64,000 nt of DNA, taken from positions 62,001-126,000 of IMG/VR virus record IMGVR_UViG_3300042558_004148. One strand, given 5' to 3'. Under the pieces are notes generated by a model. It did no database searches and was not told the origin of the DNA. It worked only from the letters and a program-made list of their open reading frames with translations. A program made the translations under genes and the position numbers. Positions 34,112-55,758 of this stretch are shown here, piece by piece (position 1 is the first letter of the stretch; each line of letters starts with the position of its first letter).

Positions 34112-35017
34112 ATGGCAACTGTAAACATCAACGAAATTTTAGGTTCTGATTCAATATCGGGCTCAAGAATAACCATAAATTCCAATTTTTTAATATTACA
34201 AAACTGGATAAATGGTTATGTTAATGTGTTTGGTATCGACACTATAAACGGGATACTAGATCTTTCAGCAGCATCTACTGGAAGAGTTCAAGCTAAAATT
34301 GGTAGATTTGATACCATATCATTACCAGCGTTAGGGACTGCAACTGCATCCGTTAATAGCTCTGGACAAGCATCATTTGCTAGTGTAACCACAACGACAT
34401 TCACTGCATCTGGAGCTATAACTGCAGCATCAAATATTACATTTGGTGGTTTATCTACTTTTGTTTCTAACGGAACATCGGAGTTTAACGGTAGATTAAC
34501 TGCAAACTCTGCAGTATATCTAGGAACACAAGGTCATGTGGTAAGTCAGAACACTACATATGCTAGTGGTGCTACTGCAGGAACAGCATTTCCAGCAAAT
34601 ACCTCTGGCGGTGGTGGTAGAACATCCACTGTAAATTCACCATATGCTATAACTGGACTGGAGGATGTTATTTATGCTGAGTGTGGCCCAACCGGATTTT
34701 ATATTAAAGTGGTTGATGGGGTTTCACCAGTAGGTGGAACACTACCTTCATTACCTCAAGGTTCAAGAGTAACCATAGTTAATACAACATCGGCTACTGG
34801 TTATATACATACAGGTGTAACCGGATCCACCCAATATTATACCGGATTTAATACTGCTGCATTATATGGCGGATACCCTTCAGGAGGTATAGTAATGAAT
34901 CAAAATTCAGCATACAGATCATCGGTTACTCTTCAGTGGGAACCTAGAGTTGGACAGGGACAAGCAACACAAAATGGATCTTGGATAGTTATAAGTGGTA
35001 CCAACGTTACATTATAA
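34112..35017 (+). CDS. Putative fibre/baseplate protein with a gp9/gp10-like N-terminal motif
   Basis: DSISGSRITINSNF N-terminal motif shared with the ORFs at 46385, 47969 and 49642. Confidence 0.55.
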   Translation: MATVNINEILGSDSISGSRITINSNFLILQNWINGYVNVFGIDTINGILDLSAASTGRVQAKIGRFDTISLPALGTATASVNSSGQASFASVTTTTFTASGAITAASNITFGGLSTFVSNGTSEFNGRLTANSAVYLGTQGHVVSQNTTYASGATAGTAFPANTSGGGGRTSTVNSPYAITGLEDVIYAECGPTGFYIKVVDGVSPVGGTLPSLPQGSRVTIVNTTSATGYIHTGVTGSTQYYTGFNTAALYGGYPSGGIVMNQNSAYRSSVTLQWEPRVGQGQATQNGSWIVISGTNVTL

Positions 35018-40913: not shown

Positions 40914-43900
40914 ATGGCCGAGGCTAAACTTTTTGATTACAATTCATCATTCTCAGTTGTAAGAACTAACCCAAAATTAACTGGTAATCTAAGAATAACA
41001 GTTGGTTCTAATGGTTCAGTTTCTTTTAACTCGATGGACGCTAATAGGATATTAAGTAATGACAGATTTAAGAACTTTAATATAACCGGCGAAAATCCGT
41101 TCGCGCTGGATGTCTATAACTTTTTTGATAAAGGCCAATTGGCAAGTGATATAATTTTTCAGACCGCTAGGTTTACTAGAGGTGAATTTCAGGCAGTGAA
41201 TCAATTTTCTGAGCAATATGATTTTTTCTATGGATCCGGTGCTTCTGCTTTGGCTGATAAGAATTATAATGAATCTTTTAGTTATTTTGCACCTCTGTGG
41301 ATAAACAGCGAGATACCAGACTATTTTGTTATATTTAAAGTTCCTGGACCATTAAGTTATTCATATTCTGATAATCAAACGATAATATCGGATGGTATTA
41401 AATATAAACTGGTTCAGAATTATGACAGTGAAGTATCCTTTAGAATATCTTATGGTAACGACGCTTCAGGTAACCCCGTTTATTATAGCGCCGGTGAAAT
41501 ATTTAATGGTTCTAGTTTATATTCAAATTATACTATAATAGAAGGTAGCGGTATAGTTGTAGTATTTGACGAGCTTGCAAATATAGATCTTGTGGATGAT
41601 GTGGAGACTTTATTTAAGAATAAGATATTACCTAATGCTACTGCAATAAAAACATTTGATCTTACGGAGAATAGCAAGATTGGTAAATATATTAGATCTA
41701 TTTTCAATGATAAGAAATTCAAAAAATCACCTGTTGATGTTAGCTGGGGTCCGAGTTCATATACGTATTTCAACGGGGTTTCTATAAAAGATGGAATATA
41801 TTCAAGAAAGGGTGAGATATTATCCGATTATTTTGCTAGTGATAGTTCTGATTCGATGATAGATTTTGAGTCTTATATAACTTCGGGATTTTCTAGAAAT
41901 GGAATTATATCACCAAATTTATTAAATCTTGAATTTCTATTTGATGATGATGATTCCGACATCTATACAATAAATAGATATATGGGATTTTATGTTTCCC
42001 GAAATGATCTAGCCTCTCTTAGACTTAATGGAGATTTCTTCTATAAATATAGAAACATCGAAGGAAATGACGATCTACCAAAACCGAGCAGAAATAGTTT
42101 TGGTTATTATTATGATAGCACAACATATCCAATAACGGCAGAATCAGGTATAATGCTATTCTATGAGAATGGTAGCGGATTTTTACCAGGTTCGAATGAT
42201 ACAAATATATTGGATAGTAATAAGTTATATTATATTACTGATAAGGATAGCAATTTCTATAGCTTAAGCAGGTCCGAATTCTATGGAGGATCAACCGGTC
42301 CTAATTATGGTCCATATGATTATTCGACTGGTTTATTCTCAGCAACTGGATCAACTGGATCAACATCTGGAAATGTAGTGATACAGAATAAAAAAACGGA
42401 TCTGCACAATTTCACAGGAACTAGTAATAAGGTGGCAAGTATACCTGCAAAGAATGCAGATTCTCCAGGTAGAGCATATTGTGAGGTTGAGTTCTTGAAA
42501 AAATCGGATCTAGTGAATCCAATATATTTTAAATTATATTGGCCAAATGGATCACTTTATGATGGATCCGAAAAATATGATCTGGTAGAGTCCGCTGATC
42601 TATCAGCAATTATACCCTGGGTTGATGGATCTTTTTATAGTACTGGTAATACGCATTATTTTAATGCTTATGGTGATGACTTATCCAAAATTGCTAGTTC
42701 ATTCTCCAATATAATAAAGAATATAGATCAGGTTACTGTTGAAAGCGGGGTAAATCTTAATTCTTCAGTTATACGACTTAGAGATTCCGGTACCTTTGGT
42801 AATGACTTATATTCGATTAGTATATTTGGTAATTATAGCGATTTTGAATCTAGATACAAGGGGATATGGGACAATACTAGTTCCTATTCGGTTAATGATA
42901 TAGTTAAATATGATGGATATTATTACACAACAGCTTCAATTATAAATGCTCCATCATCAGGTAACTTTAATCTCAATCCAATATCTGCGGGATGGAATAA
43001 ATACGACACCTTCACTTATCCCGGATATGTTAAAATTAATGGCATTGATGCATACGAGATATCAGGAACTATTAACTTTACTGGGGGTACCAGATATAGC
43101 GGAAATAGGCTTATTTTCGGCTCATCGTACGAGGGATTTGTTAACGTAAATGATTTTGTAGTAACCAAAACCGGTAAAAGTAGAGTTATGGAGGTTTCAA
43201 AGTATACCGACGAGCCAGTAAGGGATACTCAAACTAATATAGTTACTGGTTTTGATAACTTTACGTATAGCAGAGTGGCTATATTAGAGGATGAATTTGC
43301 GGAGGTTGATCTCGGTTCTTCTAACTCGTTCAATTCATATAAATCAGTGGACCTAAATATAGGGGTATTCAGCTTCTTTGATATGAAGGAATTCGATTTT
43401 GATTTTTTTACTTCGAATTATTCATACACGCCAACTGCAGAAACTTATAAGTACTATCAAATACAGCCAGGAGTAACCGGATCTATAAATAATGGTATAC
43501 CTTACTTGGTAAAGAGAGGACAAATAATATATAATAATGTACAATATGATCAGGGTTCAATATTTTATGGAACTGGTGGAATTACATTGTTTACTAGTGC
43601 AAATCCTGATCAGAAGGATCTCATAGTATTTCCAGCCCAATATTCAACAGTTACATATAATAGTTCAACAACCAACTATGGATCGGACATAGGTTATAAC
43701 GTCGATTTAGATGCGTTTAATGGATTTATTGGAATCCAATCATTAACACCATCATCTTTGAATTCTAGTGCCTCTAAACTTGAAGTATTTAACAGGGGAA
43801 AACTTAGTAGTGAATATGATTACCTGGAGGAAAACTATACAACATCGAGAGCTAATATTTCCAGAATAGTTCCTTATATAAATAAATGGGCATACACATC

Positions 43901-46382
43901 AGGAACGGACTCTAGAGGAAATTTATATAGATTAAATTCAACACCAGCCTTTTCACCAACTAACTTTTCGCCTAGTTTAGATAGGAACGAATCTGATTCC
44001 CGATACCTTACCCATGAGTGGCTAATATTAGAGAAGCCACCTAGAGATTTTCCGATAAGTGAGATGAAAAATCAGAATAGCTATTTACCAGGTATGGTTG
44101 ATCTAGATATGGCTAGAAGCTCTGATCCAGCGGATGCTCTGTATCTGTCGTCCGTATTTACTGTGGATCCTTCTGACTATTCACCAGAATATAGGGATCT
44201 AAGTTCATATACTAAGGAATTATTTACACCTTTTAGTTTTAATGAATCTAGTGGATATTATGAAACATTATTTAGGGGAATAAAAGTTGTATTGAAGAAA
44301 AGATCAAATTTATCAAATTCAAATGCCGATTCTCTTGATAAATATATTAGATTATACAGAGGTTATGAAGATTATAAATTCTCTGCTATTATTAGGGTTG
44401 TAGATGAGAATTCAACATCAATACAATCACCGGTATCTTATGAAATAATAGAGAATGAACAACAGAAATTTGTTTTGTTCGTATGTTACGTTCTTATTAA
44501 CGATTATAAGTCACAGGAGCTTGGTTATTCGGGATTGACCGGTGGAGATCCTATATTGGATTATACACTTTTATATTCCCTTAGTAATAAGGAGAAGTTA
44601 AATTATCCTCTTGTTAATAACGAACCATTTTATAAAATAGGTGACATCAAATTAAGTGCTGCATTGGACTTATCGCTATCATCTGGTAGTGTGGTAAATA
44701 CGACCGCTGTACCTGGCATAATTAATTCGATATTAAATCCTGATTATGATACTGACCTTAGAGAGGAAATAAACACAATATTCTCTCCCAATACTGCAGG
44801 TGCAACAGCTGGACCAAGTCCTATAGGTGCCGGTAGTTTCTATGTAAATTCCATAAATTCAACATATCCCTGGCCGATTGGCGTTGGACCTAGCTATATA
44901 GAATTTGGTAAAATTGCAACGGGTGGCGCGGAATATACATTTGATATACAATTCTCTGCATCTGATCCAGTCACAGTGCCAGTGGGGCCTTCTTCGGTTT
45001 ATAAAAATCAGCCGGTCTTTCAAGTTGAAGGAGGTGAGGAGTATTATAATTTCATATTAAAAAGAACATCAGCTGCTGATATATTAAGCAGAATAAACGG
45101 AAGTTCTCCCTATATAAAATATAAAACTTATTACTGGGATCCTGTTTTACTAACAACAAAAGAATCATTAAATTCATTTGAGTTGTATATGGAAAAACCA
45201 TCCAGGCTATATAAGGGTAATGGATCAAGAACAACCAAATTTTATGGTGGGCCTCAGACAATAGGTGAATCTGTTCCGACATCATATATAATACAACCTA
45301 ACCAGGACCTTCCGTCCTCCTTACTGAGATACTCTGGTGGATATTCACCTTTATTCAGAAAGGTTGTGTATTTTGATTATGATAAGACCGATACCATAAG
45401 CGGTGATAATAGTATAGATTTATCATTCAGAAACTGCAATTTCGCTCCTAATAAAGAATATTTTGGAATTCTTAGAAATCTTCCATTTACTAAGGTTGAT
45501 AAGGGCAATAATATATTAAGTCTGAGTAAAGATCTGCCTGAGGGTCCGGTATATCCATTGGTTGGCCAATCTCCAATATGGAAAAAGAATTTCAATATAT
45601 TCTCTTCAAGTTGGGATCCTGGATACTATGACCAATTCAATGGCCCAACCACATATAATCAGGTTGCTGGAACAAGAAGCATGAAGGAAAATAAATCTTT
45701 CCTTGCTTCCAAAATTATGAAAACCCCGGGTAACTTTGATTTCAGTAACTATATAACATTAGAGATATCGAGAACTTCCGGATCAACAAATATAAATGAT
45801 ATAAATAACGCAATACTTGGATATAGTAAACCAGTCCAGAATATATCTCCATCTGATTCAGGTATTGGTATAGGAAATGTTGGACCTTACCTATCTGGTG
45901 TTGATTATAATAAATTGGATATATCTATATTTCCGAATGCTGAAATTATATGGCAATATTTTCCATTGGTTAATAAAATAAGCGGTATAATTAGACTTGA
46001 TAGGATGTTGAGAAGATATCTTCTTAATTCTGGTATAAAACAAACGTTCATAGACAATATAATATCAGATTTTGGAGTGGGTAATCCTGATTCAATAGAC
46101 GATGATGTTAATGACTATATAGATCTTAACGTTTCCCCTCTATTTCAGGGAAATGTATTTGATCTTTTTGTTAATAAAACTTCTCAATCGTCCGGATCAC
46201 AAATAGTTGATTATGAGGTTAGAGGTGATATAAATCAATCGGAAAGATTTAAAATGGGATACTATCCCGATAGTAATTATAAATTAACTAGAAATACGGA
46301 TTTAATTTATAATTTTGAGTATAATCTGGAGAAAAGCTATAACTATTCAATATTATTTAACCTAGGAATTATTAAAATTTAA
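40914..46382 (+). CDS. Very large putative structural (fibre/baseplate) protein
   Basis: 1822 aa, aromatic- and Ser/Asn-rich, within the structural block. Confidence 0.6.
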   Translation: MAEAKLFDYNSSFSVVRTNPKLTGNLRITVGSNGSVSFNSMDANRILSNDRFKNFNITGENPFALDVYNFFDKGQLASDIIFQTARFTRGEFQAVNQFSEQYDFFYGSGASALADKNYNESFSYFAPLWINSEIPDYFVIFKVPGPLSYSYSDNQTIISDGIKYKLVQNYDSEVSFRISYGNDASGNPVYYSAGEIFNGSSLYSNYTIIEGSGIVVVFDELANIDLVDDVETLFKNKILPNATAIKTFDLTENSKIGKYIRSIFNDKKFKKSPVDVSWGPSSYTYFNGVSIKDGIYSRKGEILSDYFASDSSDSMIDFESYITSGFSRNGIISPNLLNLEFLFDDDDSDIYTINRYMGFYVSRNDLASLRLNGDFFYKYRNIEGNDDLPKPSRNSFGYYYDSTTYPITAESGIMLFYENGSGFLPGSNDTNILDSNKLYYITDKDSNFYSLSRSEFYGGSTGPNYGPYDYSTGLFSATGSTGSTSGNVVIQNKKTDLHNFTGTSNKVASIPAKNADSPGRAYCEVEFLKKSDLVNPIYFKLYWPNGSLYDGSEKYDLVESADLSAIIPWVDGSFYSTGNTHYFNAYGDDLSKIASSFSNIIKNIDQVTVESGVNLNSSVIRLRDSGTFGNDLYSISIFGNYSDFESRYKGIWDNTSSYSVNDIVKYDGYYYTTASIINAPSSGNFNLNPISAGWNKYDTFTYPGYVKINGIDAYEISGTINFTGGTRYSGNRLIFGSSYEGFVNVNDFVVTKTGKSRVMEVSKYTDEPVRDTQTNIVTGFDNFTYSRVAILEDEFAEVDLGSSNSFNSYKSVDLNIGVFSFFDMKEFDFDFFTSNYSYTPTAETYKYYQIQPGVTGSINNGIPYLVKRGQIIYNNVQYDQGSIFYGTGGITLFTSANPDQKDLIVFPAQYSTVTYNSSTTNYGSDIGYNVDLDAFNGFIGIQSLTPSSLNSSASKLEVFNRGKLSSEYDYLEENYTTSRANISRIVPYINKWAYTSGTDSRGNLYRLNSTPAFSPTNFSPSLDRNESDSRYLTHEWLILEKPPRDFPISEMKNQNSYLPGMVDLDMARSSDPADALYLSSVFTVDPSDYSPEYRDLSSYTKELFTPFSFNESSGYYETLFRGIKVVLKKRSNLSNSNADSLDKYIRLYRGYEDYKFSAIIRVVDENSTSIQSPVSYEIIENEQQKFVLFVCYVLINDYKSQELGYSGLTGGDPILDYTLLYSLSNKEKLNYPLVNNEPFYKIGDIKLSAALDLSLSSGSVVNTTAVPGIINSILNPDYDTDLREEINTIFSPNTAGATAGPSPIGAGSFYVNSINSTYPWPIGVGPSYIEFGKIATGGAEYTFDIQFSASDPVTVPVGPSSVYKNQPVFQVEGGEEYYNFILKRTSAADILSRINGSSPYIKYKTYYWDPVLLTTKESLNSFELYMEKPSRLYKGNGSRTTKFYGGPQTIGESVPTSYIIQPNQDLPSSLLRYSGGYSPLFRKVVYFDYDKTDTISGDNSIDLSFRNCNFAPNKEYFGILRNLPFTKVDKGNNILSLSKDLPEGPVYPLVGQSPIWKKNFNIFSSSWDPGYYDQFNGPTTYNQVAGTRSMKENKSFLASKIMKTPGNFDFSNYITLEISRTSGSTNINDINNAILGYSKPVQNISPSDSGIGIGNVGPYLSGVDYNKLDISIFPNAEIIWQYFPLVNKISGIIRLDRMLRRYLLNSGIKQTFIDNIISDFGVGNPDSIDDDVNDYIDLNVSPLFQGNVFDLFVNKTSQSSGSQIVDYEVRGDINQSERFKMGYYPDSNYKLTRNTDLIYNFEYNLEKSYNYSILFNLGIIKI

Positions 46383-46384
46383 TT

Positions 46385-47941
46385 ATGCCAAATATAAATA
46401 TACAATCTTTAGAATATTCGGACTCCCAATCGGAAATGTTCGATAAGGTAAATCTTAATTTTGATGAGATTATCGAAATACATGGGGGATCGCAAGGTAG
46501 GATAGGACCTACTGGTGGTGATGGAGCCATCGGTGATAGAGGTAAGCCTGGACCTACTGGAAATACAGGAGTCAGAGGAAATAGATGGTTTATTGATATT
46601 TCTCAGCCTTCCGGGCCAGGTGACACTGTTATTTATGGTGATTATTGGGTTAATAGAGATTCTGGTATTATTAATATATTTACTTCATTGGGATGGCAAC
46701 CTACTGGATATAGCTTATCCGACGGAGATTCCATATTTAAAAATTCGGGGTCCATATTCTCCACTGGTATTACCGGATCAGCAATATCATTAAATCAGAT
46801 AACACCATCCGATTATCTGGTCATAGTAGCCGATAAAACACCAGGTTCTGGGGTTTTAAATCAGAATCTAGCTAAATTTTTATTATCGACTGATACCACA
46901 GTAAATGATTCGCCAATATTGGAATTCTCAAAAACTAATATTGAGGATGGAAATATAGCTGACTATTCACAACATCCAATATTTAGATGGAATAATTTTA
47001 CTCCGACCGACGATGGCTTGGTATTAGAAATACCAGGGGGATCATTTATAATAGGAGCATCTGGTGGATCTGATATAAAATTCAATGAATTTATAATGAA
47101 TTCACCAGGTACAATATCATTTAATTATGGTACTACCTCCGGATCAGGAATATACTCCACTGGTGGATTTGAGATTAATGCTCCCAGCGGACAATTTAGT
47201 ATACTGAGTTCAAATATAAGCATTACCGGGGGTACATCCTCAATATCAGCTCCGGTTCAATTAAATCCAAGCTTACCTGATGGTGTTTTTAGTACTTATT
47301 TATATAGCGGTGGAACCGCACCAGCACTAAGAACTACCAGATCTGGAGATACCTTTTCTACTCTATCCCATTCCGTTTATAATATTAGTTTGGAGTCATC
47401 AAATGGAGGACAAAGAGACTTCTTTATAGATACAAGGGGTAAAATTAGAACCAAGAAAACTGAAACAGGTATATCATATGCTAATACTACCACTGATGTA
47501 ACGAGTGCTATAACATCTCCATATACAGCAAATACTAACTGGTATATGTTAACCAGGACAGGAACTCCGATAGATTCATCGGTCCTACAGGATGGTAACA
47601 CTATGGTCATAAACCCAGTTGTTCCTACCAGTGGATTTATAGGGATTGGTATTTATACAGGATCCGATTATTCATTAGGTACTACTGGTGGTATTAATAG
47701 AGGTGAATCTATAGATATAAATGTTCTTGTAAGTCCCAATGATCTGGTATATCCCAGTAACGGAATAACATTTATAGGAAAGGGAACTACCTCCGGTAAC
47801 ATTACTAGCTTGGTTGAACTTTCTAATATAGCATCCTCATTGGATCTAACCATAGCTAGAGGTGTTACCGGAGATTATATAACGGTTTTTTATAGATCAT
47901 ATGGAATTAATGGCGGATCTGGAGGATCTTTTACTATTTGA
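46385..47941 (+). CDS. Collagen-repeat tail fibre paralog A
   Basis: DS-x5-DKVNLNF N-terminus followed by 11 G-X-Y triplets ending at Trp. Confidence 0.75.
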   Translation: MPNINIQSLEYSDSQSEMFDKVNLNFDEIIEIHGGSQGRIGPTGGDGAIGDRGKPGPTGNTGVRGNRWFIDISQPSGPGDTVIYGDYWVNRDSGIINIFTSLGWQPTGYSLSDGDSIFKNSGSIFSTGITGSAISLNQITPSDYLVIVADKTPGSGVLNQNLAKFLLSTDTTVNDSPILEFSKTNIEDGNIADYSQHPIFRWNNFTPTDDGLVLEIPGGSFIIGASGGSDIKFNEFIMNSPGTISFNYGTTSGSGIYSTGGFEINAPSGQFSILSSNISITGGTSSISAPVQLNPSLPDGVFSTYLYSGGTAPALRTTRSGDTFSTLSHSVYNISLESSNGGQRDFFIDTRGKIRTKKTETGISYANTTTDVTSAITSPYTANTNWYMLTRTGTPIDSSVLQDGNTMVINPVVPTSGFIGIGIYTGSDYSLGTTGGINRGESIDINVLVSPNDLVYPSNGITFIGKGTTSGNITSLVELSNIASSLDLTIARGVTGDYITVFYRSYGINGGSGGSFTI

Positions 47942-47947
47942 TATATA
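47940..47947 (+). promoter_or_regulatory. GATATATA putative late promoter
   Basis: 29 nt upstream of ATG 47969. Confidence 0.6.
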
Positions 47948-47968
47948 GTGTAATTACCATTTAATAAT

Positions 47969-49639
47969 ATGACAGAGTTACAGTTACTTAGAATAGAAGA
48001 AGGGGATTCTCAGAATAATATAATTGATAAAATTAATTATAATTTTACCGGTATAATTGACTTCGGTGGAGGCCCTTATGGAAAGATAGGTAAAATTGGA
48101 CCTGATGGAAATAAGGGAGCTACTGGCCCGGTGGGTTCATACGGGGATCTCGGAAGGAGAGGTAGTATATGGAACATTGGTCCGACACAACCCCAAGGAA
48201 ATAACGTATATTTATCAGATTATTGGATGAACACTGATGAATTTAATAATATATACGAGTTCAACGGAAATTCTTGGGCATTGAGTGGCATAAACGTAAG
48301 ATCCAGGGATTTATTTTATGTTGATGGTCCAGTAATAACATCATCGGGCAACAGTACTAAAAGGGGTTATTACATATCATCTTCTCTTCCCTTAAGTTAT
48401 ACAACAGTAATTAGTGACGTCCAGATAACAAGTGGATCAAGCACCAGTTCCCCTAATGCGATACCAAATCCGCAGTATAGTAAATTCGTTATATCCACCG
48501 ATGGACTTAATCCGAATAAGAATATACTGGAGTTTAGTAAACACCAGTATTCTTCGAATTTAGCATTTACACAAAAAACACCCAGATTTTATTGGACTCA
48601 GGGAGCGACATCAGCAAGAGGAAATTATGGACTTAGCTTGCTTAGTGGATATAGATTCGATATAAACACTTCTTCCGATTTATATATTGCTTCCATTTCG
48701 TCAGGTATTAATTTAACCTCAACTGGAATCAATATGACAACGCCTAGTACTTTACCATTCGGTATAAATGCAACATCGAGAATTACATTTAATTTTTCGA
48801 CAGGTTCAGCCATATTCTCGACCAGTAATATAAGTTTCTCAGGTGGATTATTTTCTTTTAAAACCCCGATATATTCTTCTACCCAAAGTAATAGTGTTAT
48901 TCCAACGATGAGGTTGGCTTCAGCGTCGGCTAATACTGGAAATATTAGATATGTTTATCCATCCACTGGAACTAAGCTAATAAATCTATTTAGAAGTGTT
49001 CAATCTGGATCTATTATAAACTATGTAGATGGGTCTGGATTATTTTATTTTAATAAAAGAGTTAATTCCATACAGAATGCACAATCTGTAACTGCAACAA
49101 CGACATCGGTAGTTGCAGGAACACAGATAGATTGGGTTACAGTTCTTCCCTCTATCTCATTAACGTCAACCGGCAATTATGTATGGTCGAATAATGGAAT
49201 GGATTTAGTTGTAACAAAACCAACATCTACTGCAAACCAGAGAGGATTATGTTTATGGACTCCTGCCACTGGTGGAGCACCTGGTGGAAATGGTGGGTGG
49301 CTAAAATTATTGGAAAATGGTGAATCGATAAACTTTAGAGTTCATAGTGGCAATTCAGGAACTTCTAGTACCGATAATTTTAAATTCATTGGACTAAATA
49401 CTTCAAATAATCAGGGAGATGCACCTAATAATACACCATCTTCAAACTATTCATTTATTAATTTATCTGCATCTAATGGGGTTGGAGCATCTACAATAGA
49501 CATAACAATAGTTAATATACAAGGAACCGGATCAACTGCGGGTAACAGAAGATGGTTCAAAGTATATTATTCAGCATGGGGAGGTGGATTAACAACAAAC
49601 CAATGTGGTGTACTAACAACATATAATGCAACAGCCTAA
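47969..49639 (+). CDS. Collagen-repeat tail fibre paralog B
   Basis: GDSQNNIIDKINYNF followed by 11 G-X-Y triplets ending at Trp. Confidence 0.75.
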   Translation: MTELQLLRIEEGDSQNNIIDKINYNFTGIIDFGGGPYGKIGKIGPDGNKGATGPVGSYGDLGRRGSIWNIGPTQPQGNNVYLSDYWMNTDEFNNIYEFNGNSWALSGINVRSRDLFYVDGPVITSSGNSTKRGYYISSSLPLSYTTVISDVQITSGSSTSSPNAIPNPQYSKFVISTDGLNPNKNILEFSKHQYSSNLAFTQKTPRFYWTQGATSARGNYGLSLLSGYRFDINTSSDLYIASISSGINLTSTGINMTTPSTLPFGINATSRITFNFSTGSAIFSTSNISFSGGLFSFKTPIYSSTQSNSVIPTMRLASASANTGNIRYVYPSTGTKLINLFRSVQSGSIINYVDGSGLFYFNKRVNSIQNAQSVTATTTSVVAGTQIDWVTVLPSISLTSTGNYVWSNNGMDLVVTKPTSTANQRGLCLWTPATGGAPGGNGGWLKLLENGESINFRVHSGNSGTSSTDNFKFIGLNTSNNQGDAPNNTPSSNYSFINLSASNGVGASTIDITIVNIQGTGSTAGNRRWFKVYYSAWGGGLTTNQCGVLTTYNATA

Positions 49640-49641
49640 AT

Positions 49642-51753
49642 ATGCACTTCAATACTAAATATATTTTTCAAGGTGACTCAAAAAGTGAAGCCTTAGCTAA
49701 GATTAATTACAACTTTGATCAGATAGTTTCTTTTGGTGTTGGTCCTAATGGTCACCAGGGTGCTAAAGGAGCTACCGGAATATATGGGCCAGCTGGATTC
49801 AAGGGAATTAGCGGAACTACTGGTAATAGAGCAAGTAAATGGTATAGCCAATCAGCTCAACCTGCCGGAAGTCAACAATATGATTTATGGATAGATTCCA
49901 ATACTGCGGACGGAGTTGTTAATCAGAAGGGCTCAACCGGTTCTTGGACCGATACTGGATATAGACTTTTTAGTTCACTATACTTTAAATCTTATGAGTT
50001 TATACAGGGACCGGCCGGGGTAACAGATAAATATGTCATTGGTCTAAATAATGTCGGTGCATCAGCAGCATATACCAACCTGGTAATAAGTGATTCTGAT
50101 ATGAGTATATCTGATATAAATCCAAACAACTCCAAGGTATTAATTTCTACTGATGATCAGATAAATTTGCCAGTGATGGGATTTTCTAAGTCCGGTGCTA
50201 TATCGAACTCGAGACCATCTTTCTATTGGAAAAATACTGGAATTCTGGGTGATTTAGAATTCAGATCAGGTGGAATATTTAGGATAAGCTCGTATCTTGA
50301 TACTTCTATAAATACCGGCACTTCAAGATTAAATATATCAGGTAACAGAATAAATTCAACCTCCCTTAATTATAGCTTATCTGGTGTAGGTGATTTTACT
50401 ATAGCATCGAATAACACGATTGGTGCAGGAACTTTCTTTAATGTTAATGCATCAAATTTGGTCTTCAATCAGCTAGCTTATGATCATCTTGGTTCAATTG
50501 TAATATCCGCTGCAACTGGATCTTATTTATTAAATAATACACCTACAACGGCATTTGCGGGAAGTAATATCGAGCTGGAAGTAAGTAGCTTAAATAACTC
50601 GATATTTGAATTTACCGGTATAGGTGGAGGTAATATACTTTCTGCTAAACCTCAGGGAACAGTTTCAAGTGGTAATTTTTCGCAAACTATATTTGGGTCA
50701 ACGGGAGGAGCCACTGGTGGAACTGGTGGTCCATATTCATATCATGTCAGAAGACTACAGCAAATAAGACAAAACACCATAAATGTAAATAATGTTACCT
50801 TATATCGTGCTACCTTTGGCTCAACGGCAAATCTAACAAATGTTTTTGATATAAGAAATCTCACATTTTGGGAATCTGATGTTATAGTGGTTACTCCGCT
50901 TTCCTATACTTCGGCCGGCGGTGTTTATTTATATGTTCCAGCCGATTATACGCAGAGCATATATCCAATATATTCCTATAATAGATCCAGAACATTTAGA
51001 GTGATGCTAGATAATACTGAAACCAATCCAACGGGTAGAAATATACTTGGTCTTATTGTAGACTTTAGTCAATTTATTTCCAGTATAGGTACGGTGGTAA
51101 AAGTTTACGTCCAATTCCCTTCGACAACATGTCAATATGTTGATCTTACCTGGTTAGCATACGCTAATGCAAATAACGCTAATACCAGGTTATTCTGGAA
51201 AACATGCGATGGCAGGGGAGGATATTTAGATCTGACTAATCTATATTCAGTTGGTGTAGAACCACCTCCATCTAGTGGAACTGCTGGGGGTACCGTTCCT
51301 ACTAGCGGTGGATCTTCTCCGGGTGGAGGTGGATGTCCGACTCCTGATATGCCTATTATGATAAGTCCGGAATTAAGTATATTTGCTGGTGATCTTCAAA
51401 TCGGGGATGAAATATATACCATACATGAAATTAGTAACGAATGGGGTTATTATAAAGTCTCATATATAGAAACTACGATACAGCCTATAGTTTCTGTAAA
51501 TATAGGAGGAAAAATATTAACTGTTTCTGATACGCATAAATTTTTATTAAGTTCGGGAGATTATGTTTCTGTTAGTGAAATTGAAATAGGATCCGAAATA
51601 AAAACGATGAACGGAACTTCAATACTTGAATCAGTGCATGCTATTGGAAATGGTGAGGTACTAAAAATAGAAATAGAAGATGCTCATACATATGTTATTG
51701 ATAGTATCATATCTCATAACAAGATAGTAAGATCATTAACAATTGAACCATAA
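49642..51753 (+). CDS. Collagen-repeat tail fibre paralog C with a C-terminal Hint domain
   Basis: GDSKSEALAKINYNF, 10 G-X-Y triplets plus ASK, then Trp; after a Gly/Ser/Pro linker comes CPTPDMPI (51334)...HTYVIDSIISHNK. Confidence 0.8.
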   Translation: MHFNTKYIFQGDSKSEALAKINYNFDQIVSFGVGPNGHQGAKGATGIYGPAGFKGISGTTGNRASKWYSQSAQPAGSQQYDLWIDSNTADGVVNQKGSTGSWTDTGYRLFSSLYFKSYEFIQGPAGVTDKYVIGLNNVGASAAYTNLVISDSDMSISDINPNNSKVLISTDDQINLPVMGFSKSGAISNSRPSFYWKNTGILGDLEFRSGGIFRISSYLDTSINTGTSRLNISGNRINSTSLNYSLSGVGDFTIASNNTIGAGTFFNVNASNLVFNQLAYDHLGSIVISAATGSYLLNNTPTTAFAGSNIELEVSSLNNSIFEFTGIGGGNILSAKPQGTVSSGNFSQTIFGSTGGATGGTGGPYSYHVRRLQQIRQNTINVNNVTLYRATFGSTANLTNVFDIRNLTFWESDVIVVTPLSYTSAGGVYLYVPADYTQSIYPIYSYNRSRTFRVMLDNTETNPTGRNILGLIVDFSQFISSIGTVVKVYVQFPSTTCQYVDLTWLAYANANNANTRLFWKTCDGRGGYLDLTNLYSVGVEPPPSSGTAGGTVPTSGGSSPGGGGCPTPDMPIMISPELSIFAGDLQIGDEIYTIHEISNEWGYYKVSYIETTIQPIVSVNIGGKILTVSDTHKFLLSSGDYVSVSEIEIGSEIKTMNGTSILESVHAIGNGEVLKIEIEDAHTYVIDSIISHNKIVRSLTIEP

Positions 51754-51771
51754 ATATAAATGTAATATAAT

Positions 51772-52035
51772 ATGATAAGCTTAACAACAGAAGAAAAATC
51801 AGAAATACTCAATCTATCCAGAAATTTCGTTGAAATTCACCAGGAGATAGTGGGAGTAGAAAAAGAGATTAAAAGATTGGAGGAGTTATCTTCCGAATTA
51901 ATTGCCAAATTGGAAGATTGCAGGGAAAGAGAATGTGATTTCACACAGTCACTTTCTTCTAAATATGGCGAGGGTTCATTGGACGCTATTAATTTAGCAT
52001 GGAAAAAAGAAGAATTAGTAAATGAAGTACTTTAG
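51772..52035 (+). CDS. Small coiled-coil hypothetical protein
   Basis: 87 aa, heptad-rich, ending ...SKYGEGSLD. Confidence 0.7.
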   Translation: MISLTTEEKSEILNLSRNFVEIHQEIVGVEKEIKRLEELSSELIAKLEDCRERECDFTQSLSSKYGEGSLDAINLAWKKEELVNEVL

Positions 52036-52867
52036 CAAGGAGACGGTTTCAAAAGTTGGTAATATAGTTACCAGCAGATTTTTTATGCTAGCTATGCTGG
52101 TTGTATTGGTTCTGTTATTACTTAGACAATGTGGCGAAGCAGATAATGCTAAAGCTGAAGCATTGAGAGAGCATAATAATTATCTAGCATCACTGGATAG
52201 TGTAAGAACAATCAAAAATGACATGGGTCATTTAATACAGGAGAAAGCAACATATGAATTAAAAGCTTCTGAGCTTTCTGCGGAGCAAAAGAATTTAATT
52301 CAGCAACTAGGACTTAAATCAAATGGTAGGGGTGATACTCCAAACTCAGTAATCAATATGATAGCCGAGATTAGAGATAGCATTAATGTAGCATCCACTA
52401 TTGTAAAGGACCCAAATGGAGCAGAATCAATAACATTTGTACATAATCCGCAGATGCCAGGGAATAATAAATTAAAAATCGATGGTAAGACTCCATATGT
52501 TGTGGAAATACGTGTAGATCCAACAGATTCTACCAAGTATATAGCATCCGTTATACCAGGTCTTACCTCATTAATAATGGAGCAGAATATAGATATAACA
52601 ACTGGAATCTATAGAGACCCAAAAACTAAAAGAATGATGACGAGGGTTAGTACAACATATCCGGGTCTTACTTTTAATGATATAAATTCATTTGACATAA
52701 CGGATAGTCCAGATACCAGAAAAGCGCTAAAAGCTGCTAGAAAGGAATTTGGGTTTGGTGCTCAATTGGGATACGGTCTTTCTGGATCAAATTCCGGTAT
52801 AACACCTGGGTTTTATATAGGTATCGGTTTACAATATTCACCTAAGTTCTTACAATTCGGAAAATAA
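52022..52867 (+). CDS. Putative membrane lipoprotein, spanin-like candidate
   Basis: Basic N-terminus, hydrophobic stretch ending LLLRQC, coiled coil, and amphipathic C-terminal beta strands FGAQLGYG...FYIGIGLQY. Confidence 0.45.
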   Translation: MKYFSKETVSKVGNIVTSRFFMLAMLVVLVLLLLRQCGEADNAKAEALREHNNYLASLDSVRTIKNDMGHLIQEKATYELKASELSAEQKNLIQQLGLKSNGRGDTPNSVINMIAEIRDSINVASTIVKDPNGAESITFVHNPQMPGNNKLKIDGKTPYVVEIRVDPTDSTKYIASVIPGLTSLIMEQNIDITTGIYRDPKTKRMMTRVSTTYPGLTFNDINSFDITDSPDTRKALKAARKEFGFGAQLGYGLSGSNSGITPGFYIGIGLQYSPKFLQFGK

Positions 52868-52875
52868 TATAAAAA

Positions 52876-55191
52876 ATGGCATTTACAACTACATCTAAAT
52901 TTGTTCAGATAACACCATACCTCCTAATGGAGTATATGTACGCTGATGAACCAACCCCGGAGACATATTTTGTTAATAACGGACCTGTTACTGTGGGGTA
53001 CGATAAGTTGGTAAATGACTACATGAATAATAACGTGCAGGTATTTAATAGCGAATCTGATTATTCAATAACACATAATACCACGGAGAATAGTGTGGTG
53101 AGAATAGGGGAAAGCTCATTTGTTACTTTAGATTCGAATCTGATAATACCTTTTAATGACTATAGTGATGAATTAACTAATACTGTTGATCTACCTATAA
53201 CATTTCCATCGAACATACAGGTTGTTTACGATACTGTTAGATATCACATTAGGGCCGGTTATAACCTAAATAATATAGATGGTATTATAATGGGAATAGA
53301 ATACCAGGATCAGAACTTGGAGTTTGTTACGGTTTCACAAATCCTTATAAAAAAAGGAACGGAGCAGGACTATTATTTGAATCCTAGCCCAGTTACCATA
53401 GGATCTAATATCTATGATAAGTATTTTGAAATAAAAGTACCAAATTTAAAAGATATGGGTGATAAGTATTTAACTGCATCAAATGTTTTTAAACCACAGA
53501 CACTCGCATCACTAATAAGCTCCAGTGGAGAAGGATTTATATACGGTTCCCCCATCAGAATAAGCGCTTGGCAAATTCAGAATACCGTTGATTTTAATGG
53601 ATATCAAAGGTATAATTCTTCCCTGATATCTATTTTATCATTAGAGCAGGAGGATCCATTTTCTAATATAGGAGCAACAATAAAAGAATCTGACCAGGGT
53701 CAATTCTTTGAATATTATGCAACCGATAATGAGGGATTTATAGAGGACTTTGTTCTTTTCCAGAATTCAATTGGTAATTCATACTATATAAGTCATGAAA
53801 TAGAAGTTCTTGAACAAATTGGGGCAGCTTTTATACAGACGTCACAATTTCAATCAATACAAACTACCGCATACGATCTACCTAATTATTATAGACCCAT
53901 AGTTAGAAATGCTGGTGTTGCTGCTAGTTTTACGTTGAGATATACCATGTCGCTGGTTAACAATGTTAATCAAAATAGAACAATAAGAATATCAACATAT
54001 ACATCATCCAATCCTTCACAATGGGGAACTAATATAACACCAATATCACTTAGTAATTTTCCACAGGTTCAGAAGATCTATAATAGGATATATTCGCAGG
54101 CTGATATTAAATTGGGTAATAATAATCAGAATAAGATAAGGGAAATAATTAAATACAGCAATGTTTTTATAGATCAAAATTATGTTACTGCAACTATAAA
54201 TAATCTAAATTTCGTTGATAATACTTTGAGTAATATTGATGGGGCAGGAAATAGTACAGCATATGGTACGGGAAAACTAACCATAGCGATATCTCCTTTT
54301 GATAATTTCTATAAATTTAAGTTCATTAAAAGTGGTCCATCTGGAGATCCAGTTGCAATAGATCTTAGTAGCTCCGGTAAATTTAATTTATCTTTTGTTA
54401 ATCCAAAGGGTAATAAAATACAGATACCATCATTGGACGATAAAGGTATAGCTAATCCATTATCTGGAGAATTAGCATTTAAGATAGATGAATCTATATC
54501 CATGCAGATATTACAGATAACCGATAGAAGATTTTTTATAACTAATGGTACCACAGTAAGTCCAGCAACAGGTTCTGTTACTGGAAGTGAGACAATAAAG
54601 GTTTCATCAGGGGTAAGCAGTAATGTTCTGGAGAAGAGAATAGAAAGCGTAGTCGCAACAAGGAGAGACGAGAATCAATCGATATCAAGTGTGGGTAATA
54701 GCGTAAGTATAGGAGGATCTACCTTAGCCAGTACCGTTGGTAATACCAGCTCCGTTATGTATTGGGGTTATTGGAAAAAAGATGGGGAAGCTGACTTTGT
54801 AACGGGTCCAACTGCTGCTCCTGCTCCTATCATAACAACGTCAGGAAGCGGAACAAGTGGAACTGGAATAATAGGTACCTTGGCCCCTGCCAGATCAATA
54901 GTTAAATCCATACCTCCTGCATTTATTACATCCGGACAGGCCTCGGCTATAACAACTCCGAGAGCAAATACATCGCAGTCATTGAGGGGTAATATTTTGA
55001 TCTCTGCTTTAAGCGCTGAAATGGCTGGATATAAAGCAATAGGTTGGGCTGATTCGACAGTAATGCAATATTTCTTAAATCCAGGTAAACCCGGATATAT
55101 CAAATATCCTAATTTAACTAAGTCTGATTTTGTTAAAGCTGCTGATGGTATACTTTCACCAGCTAGCATATCTTCAATTTCAGGGCAATAA
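52876..55191 (+). CDS. Putative structural protein
   Basis: 771 aa; beta-rich N-terminal part and a Ser/Thr/Gly-rich C-terminal linker. Confidence 0.55.
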   Translation: MAFTTTSKFVQITPYLLMEYMYADEPTPETYFVNNGPVTVGYDKLVNDYMNNNVQVFNSESDYSITHNTTENSVVRIGESSFVTLDSNLIIPFNDYSDELTNTVDLPITFPSNIQVVYDTVRYHIRAGYNLNNIDGIIMGIEYQDQNLEFVTVSQILIKKGTEQDYYLNPSPVTIGSNIYDKYFEIKVPNLKDMGDKYLTASNVFKPQTLASLISSSGEGFIYGSPIRISAWQIQNTVDFNGYQRYNSSLISILSLEQEDPFSNIGATIKESDQGQFFEYYATDNEGFIEDFVLFQNSIGNSYYISHEIEVLEQIGAAFIQTSQFQSIQTTAYDLPNYYRPIVRNAGVAASFTLRYTMSLVNNVNQNRTIRISTYTSSNPSQWGTNITPISLSNFPQVQKIYNRIYSQADIKLGNNNQNKIREIIKYSNVFIDQNYVTATINNLNFVDNTLSNIDGAGNSTAYGTGKLTIAISPFDNFYKFKFIKSGPSGDPVAIDLSSSGKFNLSFVNPKGNKIQIPSLDDKGIANPLSGELAFKIDESISMQILQITDRRFFITNGTTVSPATGSVTGSETIKVSSGVSSNVLEKRIESVVATRRDENQSISSVGNSVSIGGSTLASTVGNTSSVMYWGYWKKDGEADFVTGPTAAPAPIITTSGSGTSGTGIIGTLAPARSIVKSIPPAFITSGQASAITTPRANTSQSLRGNILISALSAEMAGYKAIGWADSTVMQYFLNPGKPGYIKYPNLTKSDFVKAADGILSPASISSISGQ

Positions 55192-55209
55192 TAAAAATAT
55201 AGATTAGAA

Positions 55210-55758
55210 ATGTTATTAAATTCAAAGCAGAATAGTTTTTATTTCGTATTTCCTAAGGGCTTCTTTCCGGAGAAGGTTATTAATAAATATCTTCCCTATA
55301 TAAAGAAACAACCTATTCCTTATGATACTATACAAAATTATGTAAATAGTACGATACAATCAATAGGATTCCCTGGAATGTCAATAGATTCAGTTGAACA
55401 AGTTAGACCATTAGGTAAAAAAATAACATATAAAAGTTCAACCCCAGTTCAGGAACTATTTTCAAAGGATTTCAGTGTTCAGTTTAGATTGGTTGATGGG
55501 TTCATTAATTATTTTATAATGATGGACACGATTCTGCATTTTTTAAATTTTGCAAACGAACAAATATTTATACAGAATTTACCAATAAGGATCATGGACA
55601 GCGATGGAAACATAGTGGTCTCAGTTACTTTTAAGGAGGTTACGCTTACCTCATTTTCCGAATTTGAATTAAACTATACATCAAATGCTGCACAGGATGC
55701 AACATTTAATGTTGGATTCAAAGCTAACTATATAGATATAGTTTTTGAATCGAATTAA
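55210..55758 (+). CDS. Tail-tube-fold protein (gp3/gp19-like)
   Basis: FPGMSID...FSVQFRLVDGFINY...VSVTFKEV-x-LTSFSEFELNY...FNVGF pattern. Confidence 0.5.
   Translation: MLLNSKQNSFYFVFPKGFFPEKVINKYLPYIKKQPIPYDTIQNYVNSTIQSIGFPGMSIDSVEQVRPLGKKITYKSSTPVQELFSKDFSVQFRLVDGFINYFIMMDTILHFLNFANEQIFIQNLPIRIMDSDGNIVVSVTFKEVTLTSFSEFELNYTSNAAQDATFNVGFKANYIDIVFESN

What the first reader, a model, noticed from the sequence alone, without database searches (positions are those of the whole stretch)
46385..51753. Three tandem fibre paralogs with register-identical collagen segments: possible A/B/C heterotrimer
Seen: all three have D-S...K-(I/V)-N-x-N-F, exactly 8 residues, then 11 triplets ending at Trp (GSQ..GNR; GPY..GSI; GPN..GNR-ASK). 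They also share the downstream blocks (S/A)K(F/V)(L/V)(I/L)STD...FSK and P-x-F-x-W, despite low overall identity. Only the third carries a Hint domain. Established: phage fibres are usually homotrimers, while strict length matching among divergent collagen chains is typical of heterotrimers such as C1q. Inference: one heterotrimeric fibre, or three interchangeable fibres docking on the same baseplate site. The 34112 protein has the same N-terminal anchor without collagen.
Basis: partly seen in the sequence, partly recalled or inferred. Interest (0 to 1): 0.6.

Follow-up and report, generated by a model that had tools for sequence, protein, structure and literature searches.

The report
Three paralogous collagen-stalked phage tail fibres
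An uncultured jumbo phage carries three neighbouring tail-fibre genes that share an attachment head and a collagen stalk of exactly equal length; relatives with one or two such genes suggest three separate fibres rather than one mixed fibre, and the third gene ends in a self-cleaving intein-like domain.

Summary
Genes A (46385-47941), B (47969-49639) and C (49642-51753) each begin with DS-x6-K-[IV]-N-x-N-F, then 8 residues, then 11 triplet-lengths, then Trp. They also share the downstream STD/FSK/PxFxW blocks. Only C ends in a Hint fold (AF2 pLDDT 89; Foldseek TM 0.84 to BIL and mini-intein structures).

The equal length does not single out this trio. Every relative in the subfamily has the same 8 + 11 + W layout in the same syntenic slot, whether that slot holds one gene (L027-L033), two (L025/L026) or three. 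More distant relatives carry co-resident paralogs with unequal collagens (12 vs 13 triplets).

My best reading, at about 0.6, is three separate fibres, each probably a homotrimer. They would share an inherited virion-attachment module and differ in their distal parts. Fibre C would be matured by a C-terminal Hint/BIL-like autoprocessing domain.

An A/B/C heterotrimer is not excluded (about 0.13). The triad is fixed in order in all 19 diverged lineages. A crude charge-pair count is best for a B-A-C register, but controlled nulls give P 0.03-0.12. A three-chain fold gave only weak support (0.55 vs 0.09 control).

No relative of the fibres was found among deposited phage genomes, and the sources give them no name or Pfam family.

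The parts
46385..47941 (+). Fibre gene A (518 aa)
   Evidence: ORF. Paralog of B and C. PHROG tail-fibre hits through the collagen and neck. Orthologues 510-594 aa in 19 lineages.
47969..49639 (+). Fibre gene B (556 aa)
   Evidence: ORF. 57 orthologues of 451-675 aa (56 of them 552-675 aa), all unnamed or 'hypothetical', no Pfam family. Present only in the triad clade.
49642..51753 (+). Fibre gene C (703 aa)
   Evidence: ORF. Orthologues range from 552 to more than 1228 aa, with variable C-terminal add-ons.
46385..46486 (+). N-terminal anchor of A (aa 1-34): motif DS-x6-K-V-N-x-N-F plus the 8-residue spacer
   Evidence: Anchor profile E 1.6e-16. Low-confidence helix at aa 15-29 in the AF2 monomer.
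47969..48070 (+). N-terminal anchor of B (aa 1-34)
49642..49740 (+). N-terminal anchor of C (aa 1-33)
46487..46585 (+). Collagen-like segment of A: 11 G-x-y triplets (aa 35-67), followed by W68
   Evidence: Pfam Collagen E 0.007, below the cut-off. Collagen chains are the only PDB sequence matches.
48071..48169 (+). Collagen-like segment of B: 11 triplets (aa 35-67), followed by W68
49741..49839 (+). Collagen-like segment of C: 10 G-x-y triplets plus a Gly-less 11th triplet (ASK), aa 34-66, followed by W67
   Evidence: The 11th triplet lacks Gly in 11 of 19 lineages.
46586..47059 (+). Neck (W...QP.G...D.W...W) and conserved proximal domain of A (aa 68-225), with the STD, FSK and PxFxW blocks
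   Evidence: Beta hairpins with pLDDT about 73. The paralogs differ here by small indels.
48170..48673 (+). Neck and conserved proximal domain of B (aa 68-235)
49840..50286 (+). Neck and conserved proximal domain of C (aa 67-215)
51250..51333 (+). Gly/Ser/Pro-rich linker of C (aa 537-564), ending in GGGG before Cys565
   Evidence: Read from the translation. Conserved GGG|C junction.
51334..51720 (+). Hint (BIL/intein-like) domain of C: Cys565 to His692-Asn693, followed by a 10-aa tail whose first residue is Lys
   Evidence: AF2 pLDDT 89.4. Foldseek hits to BIL2 6tmm/6y75, DnaB and gp41-1 inteins, hedgehog 1at0. Profile vs PDB: VidaL 2.8e-4, BIL 2lwy 5e-4. Conserved Cys1, S/T-x-x-H and terminal S-H-N.
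34112..35017 (+). Conserved 301-aa protein with an anchor-like N-terminus and no collagen
   Evidence: hhalign probability 73%, E 3e-5, columns 1-28. Single-sequence tests not significant. 61-100% identical in relatives.
51772..52035 (+). 87-aa ORF that always follows the last fibre gene
   Evidence: One copy after the fibre gene or genes in all relatives, whether they have 1, 2 or 3 fibres. Its role is inferred only (assembly factor or connector).
40914..46382 (+). 1822-aa protein that bounds the fibre slot upstream; its stop lies 2 nt before the start of A
   Evidence: Syntenic in all relatives. phrog_31887, function unknown.
52022..55758 (+). Downstream boundary of the slot: 281-aa protein, 771-aa protein (sheath by position, inferred) and tail tube (182 aa)
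   Evidence: Tail tube phrog_45, E 2e-9. Synteny.

Best explanation
A, B and C are three distinct tail-fibre (receptor-binding) proteins of an uncultured jumbo myovirus-like phage. They arose by ancient tandem duplication in a fixed 'fibre slot' between a giant 1822-aa tail protein and the sheath/tube genes. Each most likely forms its own homotrimer.

The shared N-terminal ~225 residues are an inherited virion-attachment and stalk module. It consists of an anchor motif, an 8-residue spacer, an 11-triplet collagen stalk, a Trp-rich beta neck and a conserved proximal domain. Its fixed length is a family-wide geometric constraint, a molecular ruler between the docking point and the neck. It is not a sign of chain pairing.

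The paralog-specific first 12 residues suggest that each fibre has its own docking site. The divergent distal 300-500 residues would give three binding specificities.

Fibre C carries a C-terminal Hint/BIL-like domain behind a Gly-rich linker. Cys565 would form a thioester at the Gly|Cys junction. The domain would then be released by hydrolysis, or by transfer of the fibre's new C-terminus to another nucleophile. Functionally this resembles the self-cleaving C-terminal chaperone domains of other phage fibres.

Shown here: the paralogy, the module architecture, the synteny, the copy-number variation and the Hint fold with its catalytic residues. Inferred: trimeric state, virion location, docking sites, receptor binding and actual cleavage.
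For: The tail-module context is clear: a gp6-like baseplate wedge and a tail tube lie nearby. The fibre slot is always flanked by homologues of the same genes.

The slot holds 3 genes in the window clade and in L019-L024, 2 in L025/L026 and 1 in L027-L033. All have the same 8-residue spacer, 11 triplets and Trp. A 219-kb record that is 79% complete has a single full copy, and a 99%-complete 270-kb record has exactly three.

More distant relatives in the same synteny have 1-3 paralogs with 12, 13 or 14 triplets. Lengths are unequal within one locus in L054, L069 and L077; L084 was not reliably counted.

Identity between paralogs falls from 30-48% in the anchor and collagen to 12-23% in the distal part. 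There is no sign of concerted evolution. Straight after the Trp the paralogs differ by indels.

Lengths are A 510-594 aa, B 534-667 aa and C 552 to more than 1228 aa, with swapped C-terminal add-ons on C. All three collagens are net basic (+3, +3, +4), so there is no acid/base complementarity.

A second, independent Hint sits at the C-terminus of another fibre type in L045-L048.
Against: No experiment or structure shows the oligomeric state. Within the triad clade the three genes are never lost or reordered in 19 diverged lineages. That also fits an obligate complex.

The collagen X/Y positions carry paralog-specific conserved residues: GPY and GS[YF]-GD in B, GH and GAT in C, GPT in A. A plain homotrimeric spacer would not obviously need these.

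Homotrimer registers have few favourable axial charge pairs (AAA 4 favourable/4 repulsive, BBB 10/4, CCC 6/4), against 27/2 for B-A-C.

The AF2 monomer of A is poor (pLDDT 55.6), so the fibre architecture is not seen directly.
Confidence: 0.6

Rival explanations
1. One heterotrimeric fibre. One chain each of A, B and C zips into a single collagen triple helix, most plausibly with B leading, A in the middle and C trailing. This would resemble C1q or type IV collagen, with three different distal heads.
For: Identical register of anchor, spacer and 11 triplets in all three chains in all 19 deduplicated triads. The triad always appears in the order A-B-C wherever B exists. The B-A-C register has 27 favourable and 2 repulsive axial K/R-to-D/E pairs, the best of all 27 compositions. 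The in-register alignment is the maximum of a 5x5 slide test. The Gly-less 11th triplet of C would be less costly if only one chain in three carries it. A three-chain fold of residues 1-125 gave 'weak support': score 0.55, best control 0.09, runs agreeing in at least 87% of contacts, partner pLDDT at least 74. The mark was reached by 58 of 80 solved complexes and 2 of 110 mismatches, but scores of 0.60 or under are more often wrong than right.
Against: The length match is a subfamily trait also found in one- and two-gene relatives. Co-resident paralogs in more distant relatives have unequal collagens. With a null that keeps alignment columns intact, the charge-pair excess has P 0.12 (all columns) or 0.027 (columns 1-9), and the register was chosen post hoc. 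Phylogenetically independent contrasts are too few (1-4 pairs, p about 1). All three chains are net basic. There is no N-terminal Cys and no gC1q- or NC1-type chain-selection domain. There are indels right after the Trp, and C varies widely in length. The fold test cannot tell a paralog from self; the tool itself notes that close cousins of a true partner also pass. I found no report of a heterotrimeric collagen in a phage fibre.
Confidence: 0.13
2. Three interchangeable homotrimeric fibres compete for one and the same baseplate site, so that virions carry mixtures and the population hedges its host range.
For: The same anchor motif and the same stalk length in all three. Variable copy number in the slot among clades.
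Against: Each paralog keeps its own strongly conserved first ~12 residues, and its own collagen and neck signatures, across lineages in which the rest has fallen to 30-50% identity. This points to paralog-specific contacts. No member of the triad is ever lost within the clade, which would be unexpected for redundant alternatives.
Confidence: 0.12
3. Not all three are receptor-binding fibres. At least one, B being the best candidate, is a structural strut or connector of the baseplate that merely shares the ancestral module.
For: B orthologues mostly fall in a narrow length range (56 of 57 are 552-675 aa, one is 451 aa), and B has the best conserved collagen X/Y positions. B is the latest addition: it is absent in L025/L026.
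Against: B's distal part diverges as fast as those of A and C (32-45% vs 33-57% and 28-42% identity at the same distances). It diverges faster than the flanking structural genes.
Confidence: 0.1

Closest known systems
Multi-fibre / multi-RBP sets of large myoviruses, in which tandemly duplicated receptor-binding proteins share a conserved N-terminal attachment module (for example CBA120-type tailspike sets and branched Klebsiella phage RBPs; from my own knowledge and from the abstracts listed)
   Same: Conserved N-terminal structural module, fast-evolving distal part, tandem genes in the tail module, and copy number that differs between relatives.
   Different: The shared module here is an unannotated anchor motif plus a fixed-length collagen stalk. 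There is no sequence match to any deposited phage genome and no solved structure for the anchor.
Collagen-like segments in phage fibres, such as streptococcal prophage hyaluronidase HylP (PDB 6wv2 appears), staphylococcal phage 80alpha FibU (PMC7048315), and PHROG tail-fibre families 3904, 5073 and 366
   Same: A short uninterrupted G-x-y run inside a tail-fibre protein, followed by a beta-rich neck. The PHROG matches cover the collagen and the neck.
   Different: The length is fixed at exactly 11 triplets, preceded by an invariant 8-residue spacer, across dozens of lineages and three paralogs. Paralog-specific X/Y residues are conserved.
C1q A/B/C chains and other heterotrimeric collagens
   Same: Three paralogous chains encoded side by side, with collagen segments of equal length and one chain carrying a Gly-to-Ala type interruption.
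   Different: No gC1q or NC1 chain-selection domain, no N-terminal interchain Cys and no charge complementarity. One- and two-gene relatives have the same stalk.
Bacterial intein-like (BIL) domains and the hedgehog C-terminal autoprocessing domain (PDB 6tmm/6y75, 2lwy, 1at0)
   Same: Hint fold, N-terminal Cys after a Gly, block-B S/T-x-x-H, terminal His-Asn, no +1 nucleophile and no homing endonuclease. The domain sits at the C-terminus of its 'cargo', as in hedgehog.
   Different: It is attached to a phage tail fibre and falls below the Pfam thresholds. Activity is untested.
Peptidase S74 intramolecular chaperone domains of phage fibres and tailspikes (described in PMC7824862)
   Same: A C-terminal domain of a fibre that is expected to cut itself off after assembly.
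   Different: Unrelated fold and chemistry: a Ser-Lys dyad in S74, a Cys thioester and Asn cyclisation here. There is no S74 match.

Membership tests
Collagen triple-helix repeat (PF01391) | Uninterrupted G-x-y repeats long enough to form a triple helix | tested here: met
   11, 11 and 10(+1) triplets. PDB profile matches are to collagen chains only.
Collagen triple-helix repeat (PF01391) | Score above Pfam's gathering threshold | tested here: not met
   A scores 16.6 bits against a cut-off of 27.2. B and C give no hit; the segment is short.
Collagen triple-helix repeat (PF01391) | Actual trimeric triple helix | not testable with these tools
   Needs CD, protease resistance or a structure.
Phage tail fibre / receptor-binding protein | Encoded in the tail/baseplate module | tested here: met
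   Lies between a gp6-like wedge and giant tail proteins on one side and the sheath-position gene and tail tube on the other.
Phage tail fibre / receptor-binding protein | Conserved N-terminal attachment part, fast-evolving distal part | tested here: met
   Region-wise identities. Distal parts are replaced in L025/L026.
Phage tail fibre / receptor-binding protein | Significant match to an annotated fibre family | tested here: inconclusive
   PHROG tail-fibre families at E 1e-7 to 1e-3, carried mostly by the collagen and neck. There is no match in the deposited phage genomes searched.
Phage tail fibre / receptor-binding protein | Presence in the virion and binding to a host receptor | not testable with these tools
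   No cultured phage or host.
Hint superfamily (intein / BIL / hedgehog) | Hint fold | tested here: met
   pLDDT 89.4. Foldseek E 2e-9, TM 0.84 to BIL2; 62 matches at E<=0.001, and the matches listed are inteins, BIL or hedgehog domains.
Hint superfamily (intein / BIL / hedgehog) | N-terminal Cys/Ser nucleophile, block-B (T/S)xxH, C-terminal His-Asn | tested here: met
   Cys is nearly invariant (90% or more of rows). The motif S-D-(T/S)-H is conserved. S-H-N is invariant in the 10 homologues.
Canonical splicing intein | Nucleophilic +1 residue (Cys/Ser/Thr) and insertion inside a conserved host protein | tested here: not met
   The +1 residue is K, N, L or I. The domain is terminal, followed by a variable tail of 6-12 residues, and there is no endonuclease. 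It should therefore be filed as BIL/hedgehog-like, not as an intein.
Hint superfamily (intein / BIL / hedgehog) | Pfam family score above threshold | tested here: not met
   No hit for C at E<=10. Nine of 10 homologues give weak Intein_splicing matches, best E 2.6e-4.
C1q-type heterotrimeric collagen | Three different chains with register-matched collagen | tested here: met
C1q-type heterotrimeric collagen | Chain-selecting globular domain (gC1q/NC1) and interchain disulfides | tested here: not met
   No C1q or NC1 Pfam hit. No Cys in the first ~110 residues of A, B or C.
C1q-type heterotrimeric collagen | Module unable to work as a homotrimer (paralogs obligatorily co-occur) | tested here: not met
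   One-gene and two-gene relatives have the same module in the same slot. Within the triad clade co-occurrence is strict.
C1q-type heterotrimeric collagen | Physical 1:1:1 assembly | tested here: inconclusive
   Fold test weak (0.55 vs 0.09 control). Charge-pair test P 0.03-0.12.

The most novel reading that the evidence does not exclude
The triad encodes a true A/B/C heterotrimeric collagen stalk with a fixed B-leading, A-middle, C-trailing register. It would have evolved by stepwise duplication (1, then 2, then 3 genes) from a homotrimeric fibre, and would give one fibre with three different receptor-binding heads. This would be the first heterotrimeric collagen described in a virus. A further possibility is that the Hint domain of chain C covalently transfers the fibre tip to another molecule rather than simply cutting itself off.
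Probability: 0.12. Interest if true: 0.75.

Novelty: new variant of a known kind. Interest (0 to 1): 0.4.

Why it matters
The family shows a compact, portable attachment module: an anchor plus a fixed-length collagen 'ruler'. It has been reused for one to three fibres per phage across many uncultured large phages. That makes it a useful handle for finding receptor-binding genes in metagenomic jumbo phages that have no annotation.

The nested 1-, 2- and 3-gene clades give a natural series for asking how a homotrimeric collagen fibre diversifies, and whether it can become heterotrimeric.

A Hint/BIL-type domain at the end of a tail fibre would be a second, chemically different route to the self-cleaving maturation known from S74 chaperone domains. 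Because it works through a thioester, it could also ligate the fibre tip to something else.

Tried and rejected
Searches that found nothing:
- Pfam on all seven proteins of the region gave nothing above threshold, and no Hint hit on C's C-terminus even at E<=10.
- megablast and tblastn of A, C and two distant family members against deposited phage genomes gave nothing, except a 32% match of C aa 6-144 to an uncultured 462-kb phage.
- PDB sequence searches of the anchor found nothing. For the N-terminal module they found collagens only.
- The ESM Atlas feature search gave scores of 0.84 or less, which are leads only.

Structure and complex predictions:
- AF2 of full-length A as a monomer was poor (pLDDT 55.6).
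- A VIA search of that model gave best Z 5.6 (a phage capsid spike). Z 3.2-3.5 for the neck against collagen XV/XVIII trimerisation domains is too weak to use.
- Complex prediction on A+B+C (125 aa each) gave 'weak support': score 0.55, best control 0.09. By the tool's calibration such a score is more often wrong than right, and it cannot separate a paralog from self. I could not run AAA, BBB or CCC because the cap is one job.

Charge-pair analysis:
- Within-chain shuffles looked highly significant, but they ignore shared ancestry.
- The column-permutation null gave P 0.12 / 0.027.
- Independent contrasts had no power.
- I therefore rejected this analysis as evidence.

Other:
- The Tako8/WD40 top hit of the Hint profile is an artefact of summed weak repeats.
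- The promoter/terminator scan was at or below shuffle expectation.
- Literature searches found no phage collagen heterotrimer and no Hint-capped tail fibre. The library is incomplete.

Full report
WHAT IS THERE. The window is part of a 217.9-kb IMG/VR viral record. Near-identical contigs reach 343-373 kb, so this is an uncultured jumbo phage. The surrounding genes form a tail and replication module. They include a gp6-like baseplate wedge (17875-19599, phrog_219, E 4e-33), several giant proteins of 1200-1800 aa, a tail tube (55210-55758), a gp32-like SSB and a helicase. They lie on one strand, 27 and 2 nt apart, and A starts 2 nt after the stop of an 1822-aa ORF.

CHECK OF THE OBSERVATION. 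All details hold.
- Each protein has D-S, six residues, K, I/V, N, x, N, F. Then come exactly 8 residues, then 11 triplet-lengths, then Trp.
- In C the 11th triplet is A-S-K rather than G-x-y.
- There is no gap in the three-way alignment up to the Trp.
- The blocks K-x3-STD, FSK and P-x-F-x-W are invariant.
- The paralogy is significant over most of the length (A/B E 1.5e-20, A/C E 7e-15).
- By region, the paralogs are 30-45% identical in the anchor and 36-48% in the collagen, where a third of positions is Gly. They are 12-23% identical in the distal 300 residues.

THE HINT DOMAIN. Pfam does not see it, but three lines of evidence support it.
- Sequence: the C-terminal 140 residues carry Cys565 straight after GGGG, an S-D-T-H block and a terminal S-H-N. 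All are conserved in nine full-length homologues.
- Profile search: this finds the VidaL intein and the C. thermocellum BIL domain in the PDB (E 3e-4 and 5e-4).
- Structure: an AF2 model is confident (pLDDT 89.4). Foldseek puts it on BIL2 of Tetrahymena, DnaB and gp41-1 mini-inteins and the hedgehog autoprocessing domain (E 2e-9 to 2e-7, TM 0.75-0.85).

The residue after His-Asn is K, N, L or I, and only a short variable tail follows. The domain is therefore of the BIL/hedgehog type, not a splicing intein. It is the only Hint in the 218-kb record. Among C orthologues it is present in the window clade and in L019. In L020 and L021 other C-terminal domains replace it. It is absent in L023, L025 and L026. 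A second, independent Hint ends another fibre type in L045-L048.

THE 34112 PROTEIN. Its first 26 residues align in register with the anchor. This is not significant for the single sequence. It reaches probability 73% (E 3e-5) when profiles of orthologues are compared. The protein is much better conserved than the fibres, at 61-100% identity in relatives. The shared anchor is plausible but not proven.

COMPARATIVE EVIDENCE. An alignment-based scan of IMG/VR gave 76 loci, and a metagenome scan with B's N-terminus gave 33 more. Three results matter.

1. Synteny. The fibre gene or genes always occupy one slot. It lies between the homologue of the 1822-aa protein and an 87-aa ORF, a 281-aa protein, a 771-aa protein (sheath by position) and the tail tube.

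2. Copy number differs between nested clades.
- Three genes, always in the order A-B-C, occur in every locus that contains B and is long enough. That is 34 triads, or 19 after removing near-duplicates, with A identity down to about 36%.
- Two genes (A-like and C-like, no B) occur in L025/L026.
- One gene of 1044-1303 aa occurs in L027-L033.
- A whole-record search confirms exactly three copies in a 99%-complete 270-kb genome and one full copy in a 79%-complete 219-kb record.

3. Stalk length. The 8-residue spacer, the 11 triplet-lengths and the Trp are the same in all of these, whatever the copy number. Still more distant phages in the same synteny keep the 8-residue spacer but have 12, 13 or 14 triplets. 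In several loci (L054, L069, L077) the paralogs in one slot differ in length.

It follows that equal length is inherited and family-wide. It is compatible with homotrimers, since the single-gene phages have nothing else to pair with.

WHAT STILL SPEAKS FOR A HETEROTRIMER, AND HOW I TESTED IT.
- The triad is remarkably stable within its clade. Each paralog keeps its own conserved N-terminal dozen residues and its own conserved X/Y residues in the collagen.
- I counted axial K/R(Y)-to-D/E(X') contacts for all 27 chain compositions over the 19 triads. B-A-C is the best (27 favourable, 2 repulsive). The homotrimers are near zero.
- Shuffling residues within chains makes this look very significant, but that ignores shared ancestry. 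Permuting whole alignment columns keeps the ancestry and gives P 0.12 for all columns, or P 0.027 if the invariant C-terminal Arg columns are held fixed.
- The register was chosen after seeing the data.
- Tests on phylogenetically independent pairs have only 1-4 contrasts.
- A three-chain fold of residues 1-125 scored 0.55 against a best control of 0.09. The runs agreed in at least 87% of contacts and the partner pLDDT was at least 74. The tool rates this as weak support, more often wrong than right at that level, and warns that close cousins of a true partner also pass. That is exactly the situation of paralogs standing in for self.
- Against the heterotrimer: all three collagens are net basic. 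There is no chain-selection domain or N-terminal Cys. The chains differ by indels straight after the Trp. C ranges from 552 to more than 1228 aa while A and B stay near 510-670 aa.

CONCLUSION. The most economical reading is a three-fibre set. Each fibre is probably a homotrimer, built on one inherited attachment-and-stalk module, with divergent distal binding parts. Fibre C would be matured by a Hint/BIL-type domain. I put this at about 0.6, the heterotrimer at about 0.13, interchangeable fibres on one site at about 0.12, and a partly structural role (B) at about 0.1.

None of this is backed by an experiment. I found no relative of the fibres among deposited phage genomes. The B orthologues listed are unnamed or 'hypothetical' and carry no Pfam family. 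The searched literature holds no case of a heterotrimeric phage collagen or a Hint-capped fibre.

NOVELTY AND SCORE. Collagen-stalked fibres and duplicated fibre sets are known kinds. Three things are new here: the unannotated anchor plus fixed-length collagen module, its nested 1/2/3-gene series, and a Hint domain at the end of a fibre. I rate it a new variant of a known kind, with interest 0.4.

Noticed in passing
window 51772-52035: An 87-aa ORF follows the last fibre gene exactly once in every relative, whether the slot holds 1, 2 or 3 fibre genes (27-100% identity in the BLAST alignments). It could be a fibre assembly factor or a connector.
   Followed up: partly
L045:4600-7929, L047:4597-7929 (also L034-L086 upstream genes): A second fibre type has a variant anchor (an insertion, SDLDPNS-x2-WWS-x-DK-I-D-K-I-N-Y-N-F), a different spacer and about 13-14 triplets. 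It sits just upstream of the standard fibre in many distant relatives. In L045-L048 it ends in its own Hint domain (Cys1, T-G-E-H, C-H-N, then Gln).
   Followed up: partly
L020:10851-13013, L021:4253-6229, L136:6692-10378: C orthologues carry different C-terminal add-ons after a conserved two-Cys core end: Hint, other beta-rich domains, or none. Total length runs from 552 to more than 1228 aa, so the C-terminus of fibre C is a module-swap hot spot.
   Followed up: partly
window 46487-46585, 48071-48169, 49741-49839: Arg at the Y position of triplet 10 is conserved in all three chains in 56 of 57 cases across the 19 lineages. Aromatic residues within the collagen are conserved per paralog (Tyr in B triplets 1 and 8, His in C triplet 2). 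This is unusual for a plain spacer and unexplained.
   Followed up: partly
window 46350-46400, 47920-47985, 49610-49660: No Shine-Dalgarno-like purine run lies upstream of the A, B or C start codons; the stretches are AT-rich. This may hint at a host group that does not rely on SD pairing. The genome has about 35% G+C.
   Followed up: no
window 20152-24912, 28985-33052, 37258-40893, 40914-46382: Four giant ORFs (1586, 1355, 1211 and 1822 aa) lie in the tail module with no Pfam family. They have only function-unknown PHROG matches or none; 37258-40893 matches phrog_29329 at E 5e-128. The homologues of the last two bound the fibre slot in all relatives.
   Followed up: partly
window 46586-46714 (A aa 68-110): The Trp-rich neck after the collagen gave weak structural matches to the trimerisation domains of collagens XV and XVIII (Z 3.2-3.5) and to beta-hairpin segments of phage tailspikes. 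These are too weak to count, but fit a trimerisation role.
   Followed up: partly
LR756500.1:292199-292567: The only deposited phage record with any similarity to the fibres is an uncultured 462-kb phage, at 32% identity to C aa 6-144. The attachment module therefore also occurs in other huge phages.
   Followed up: no
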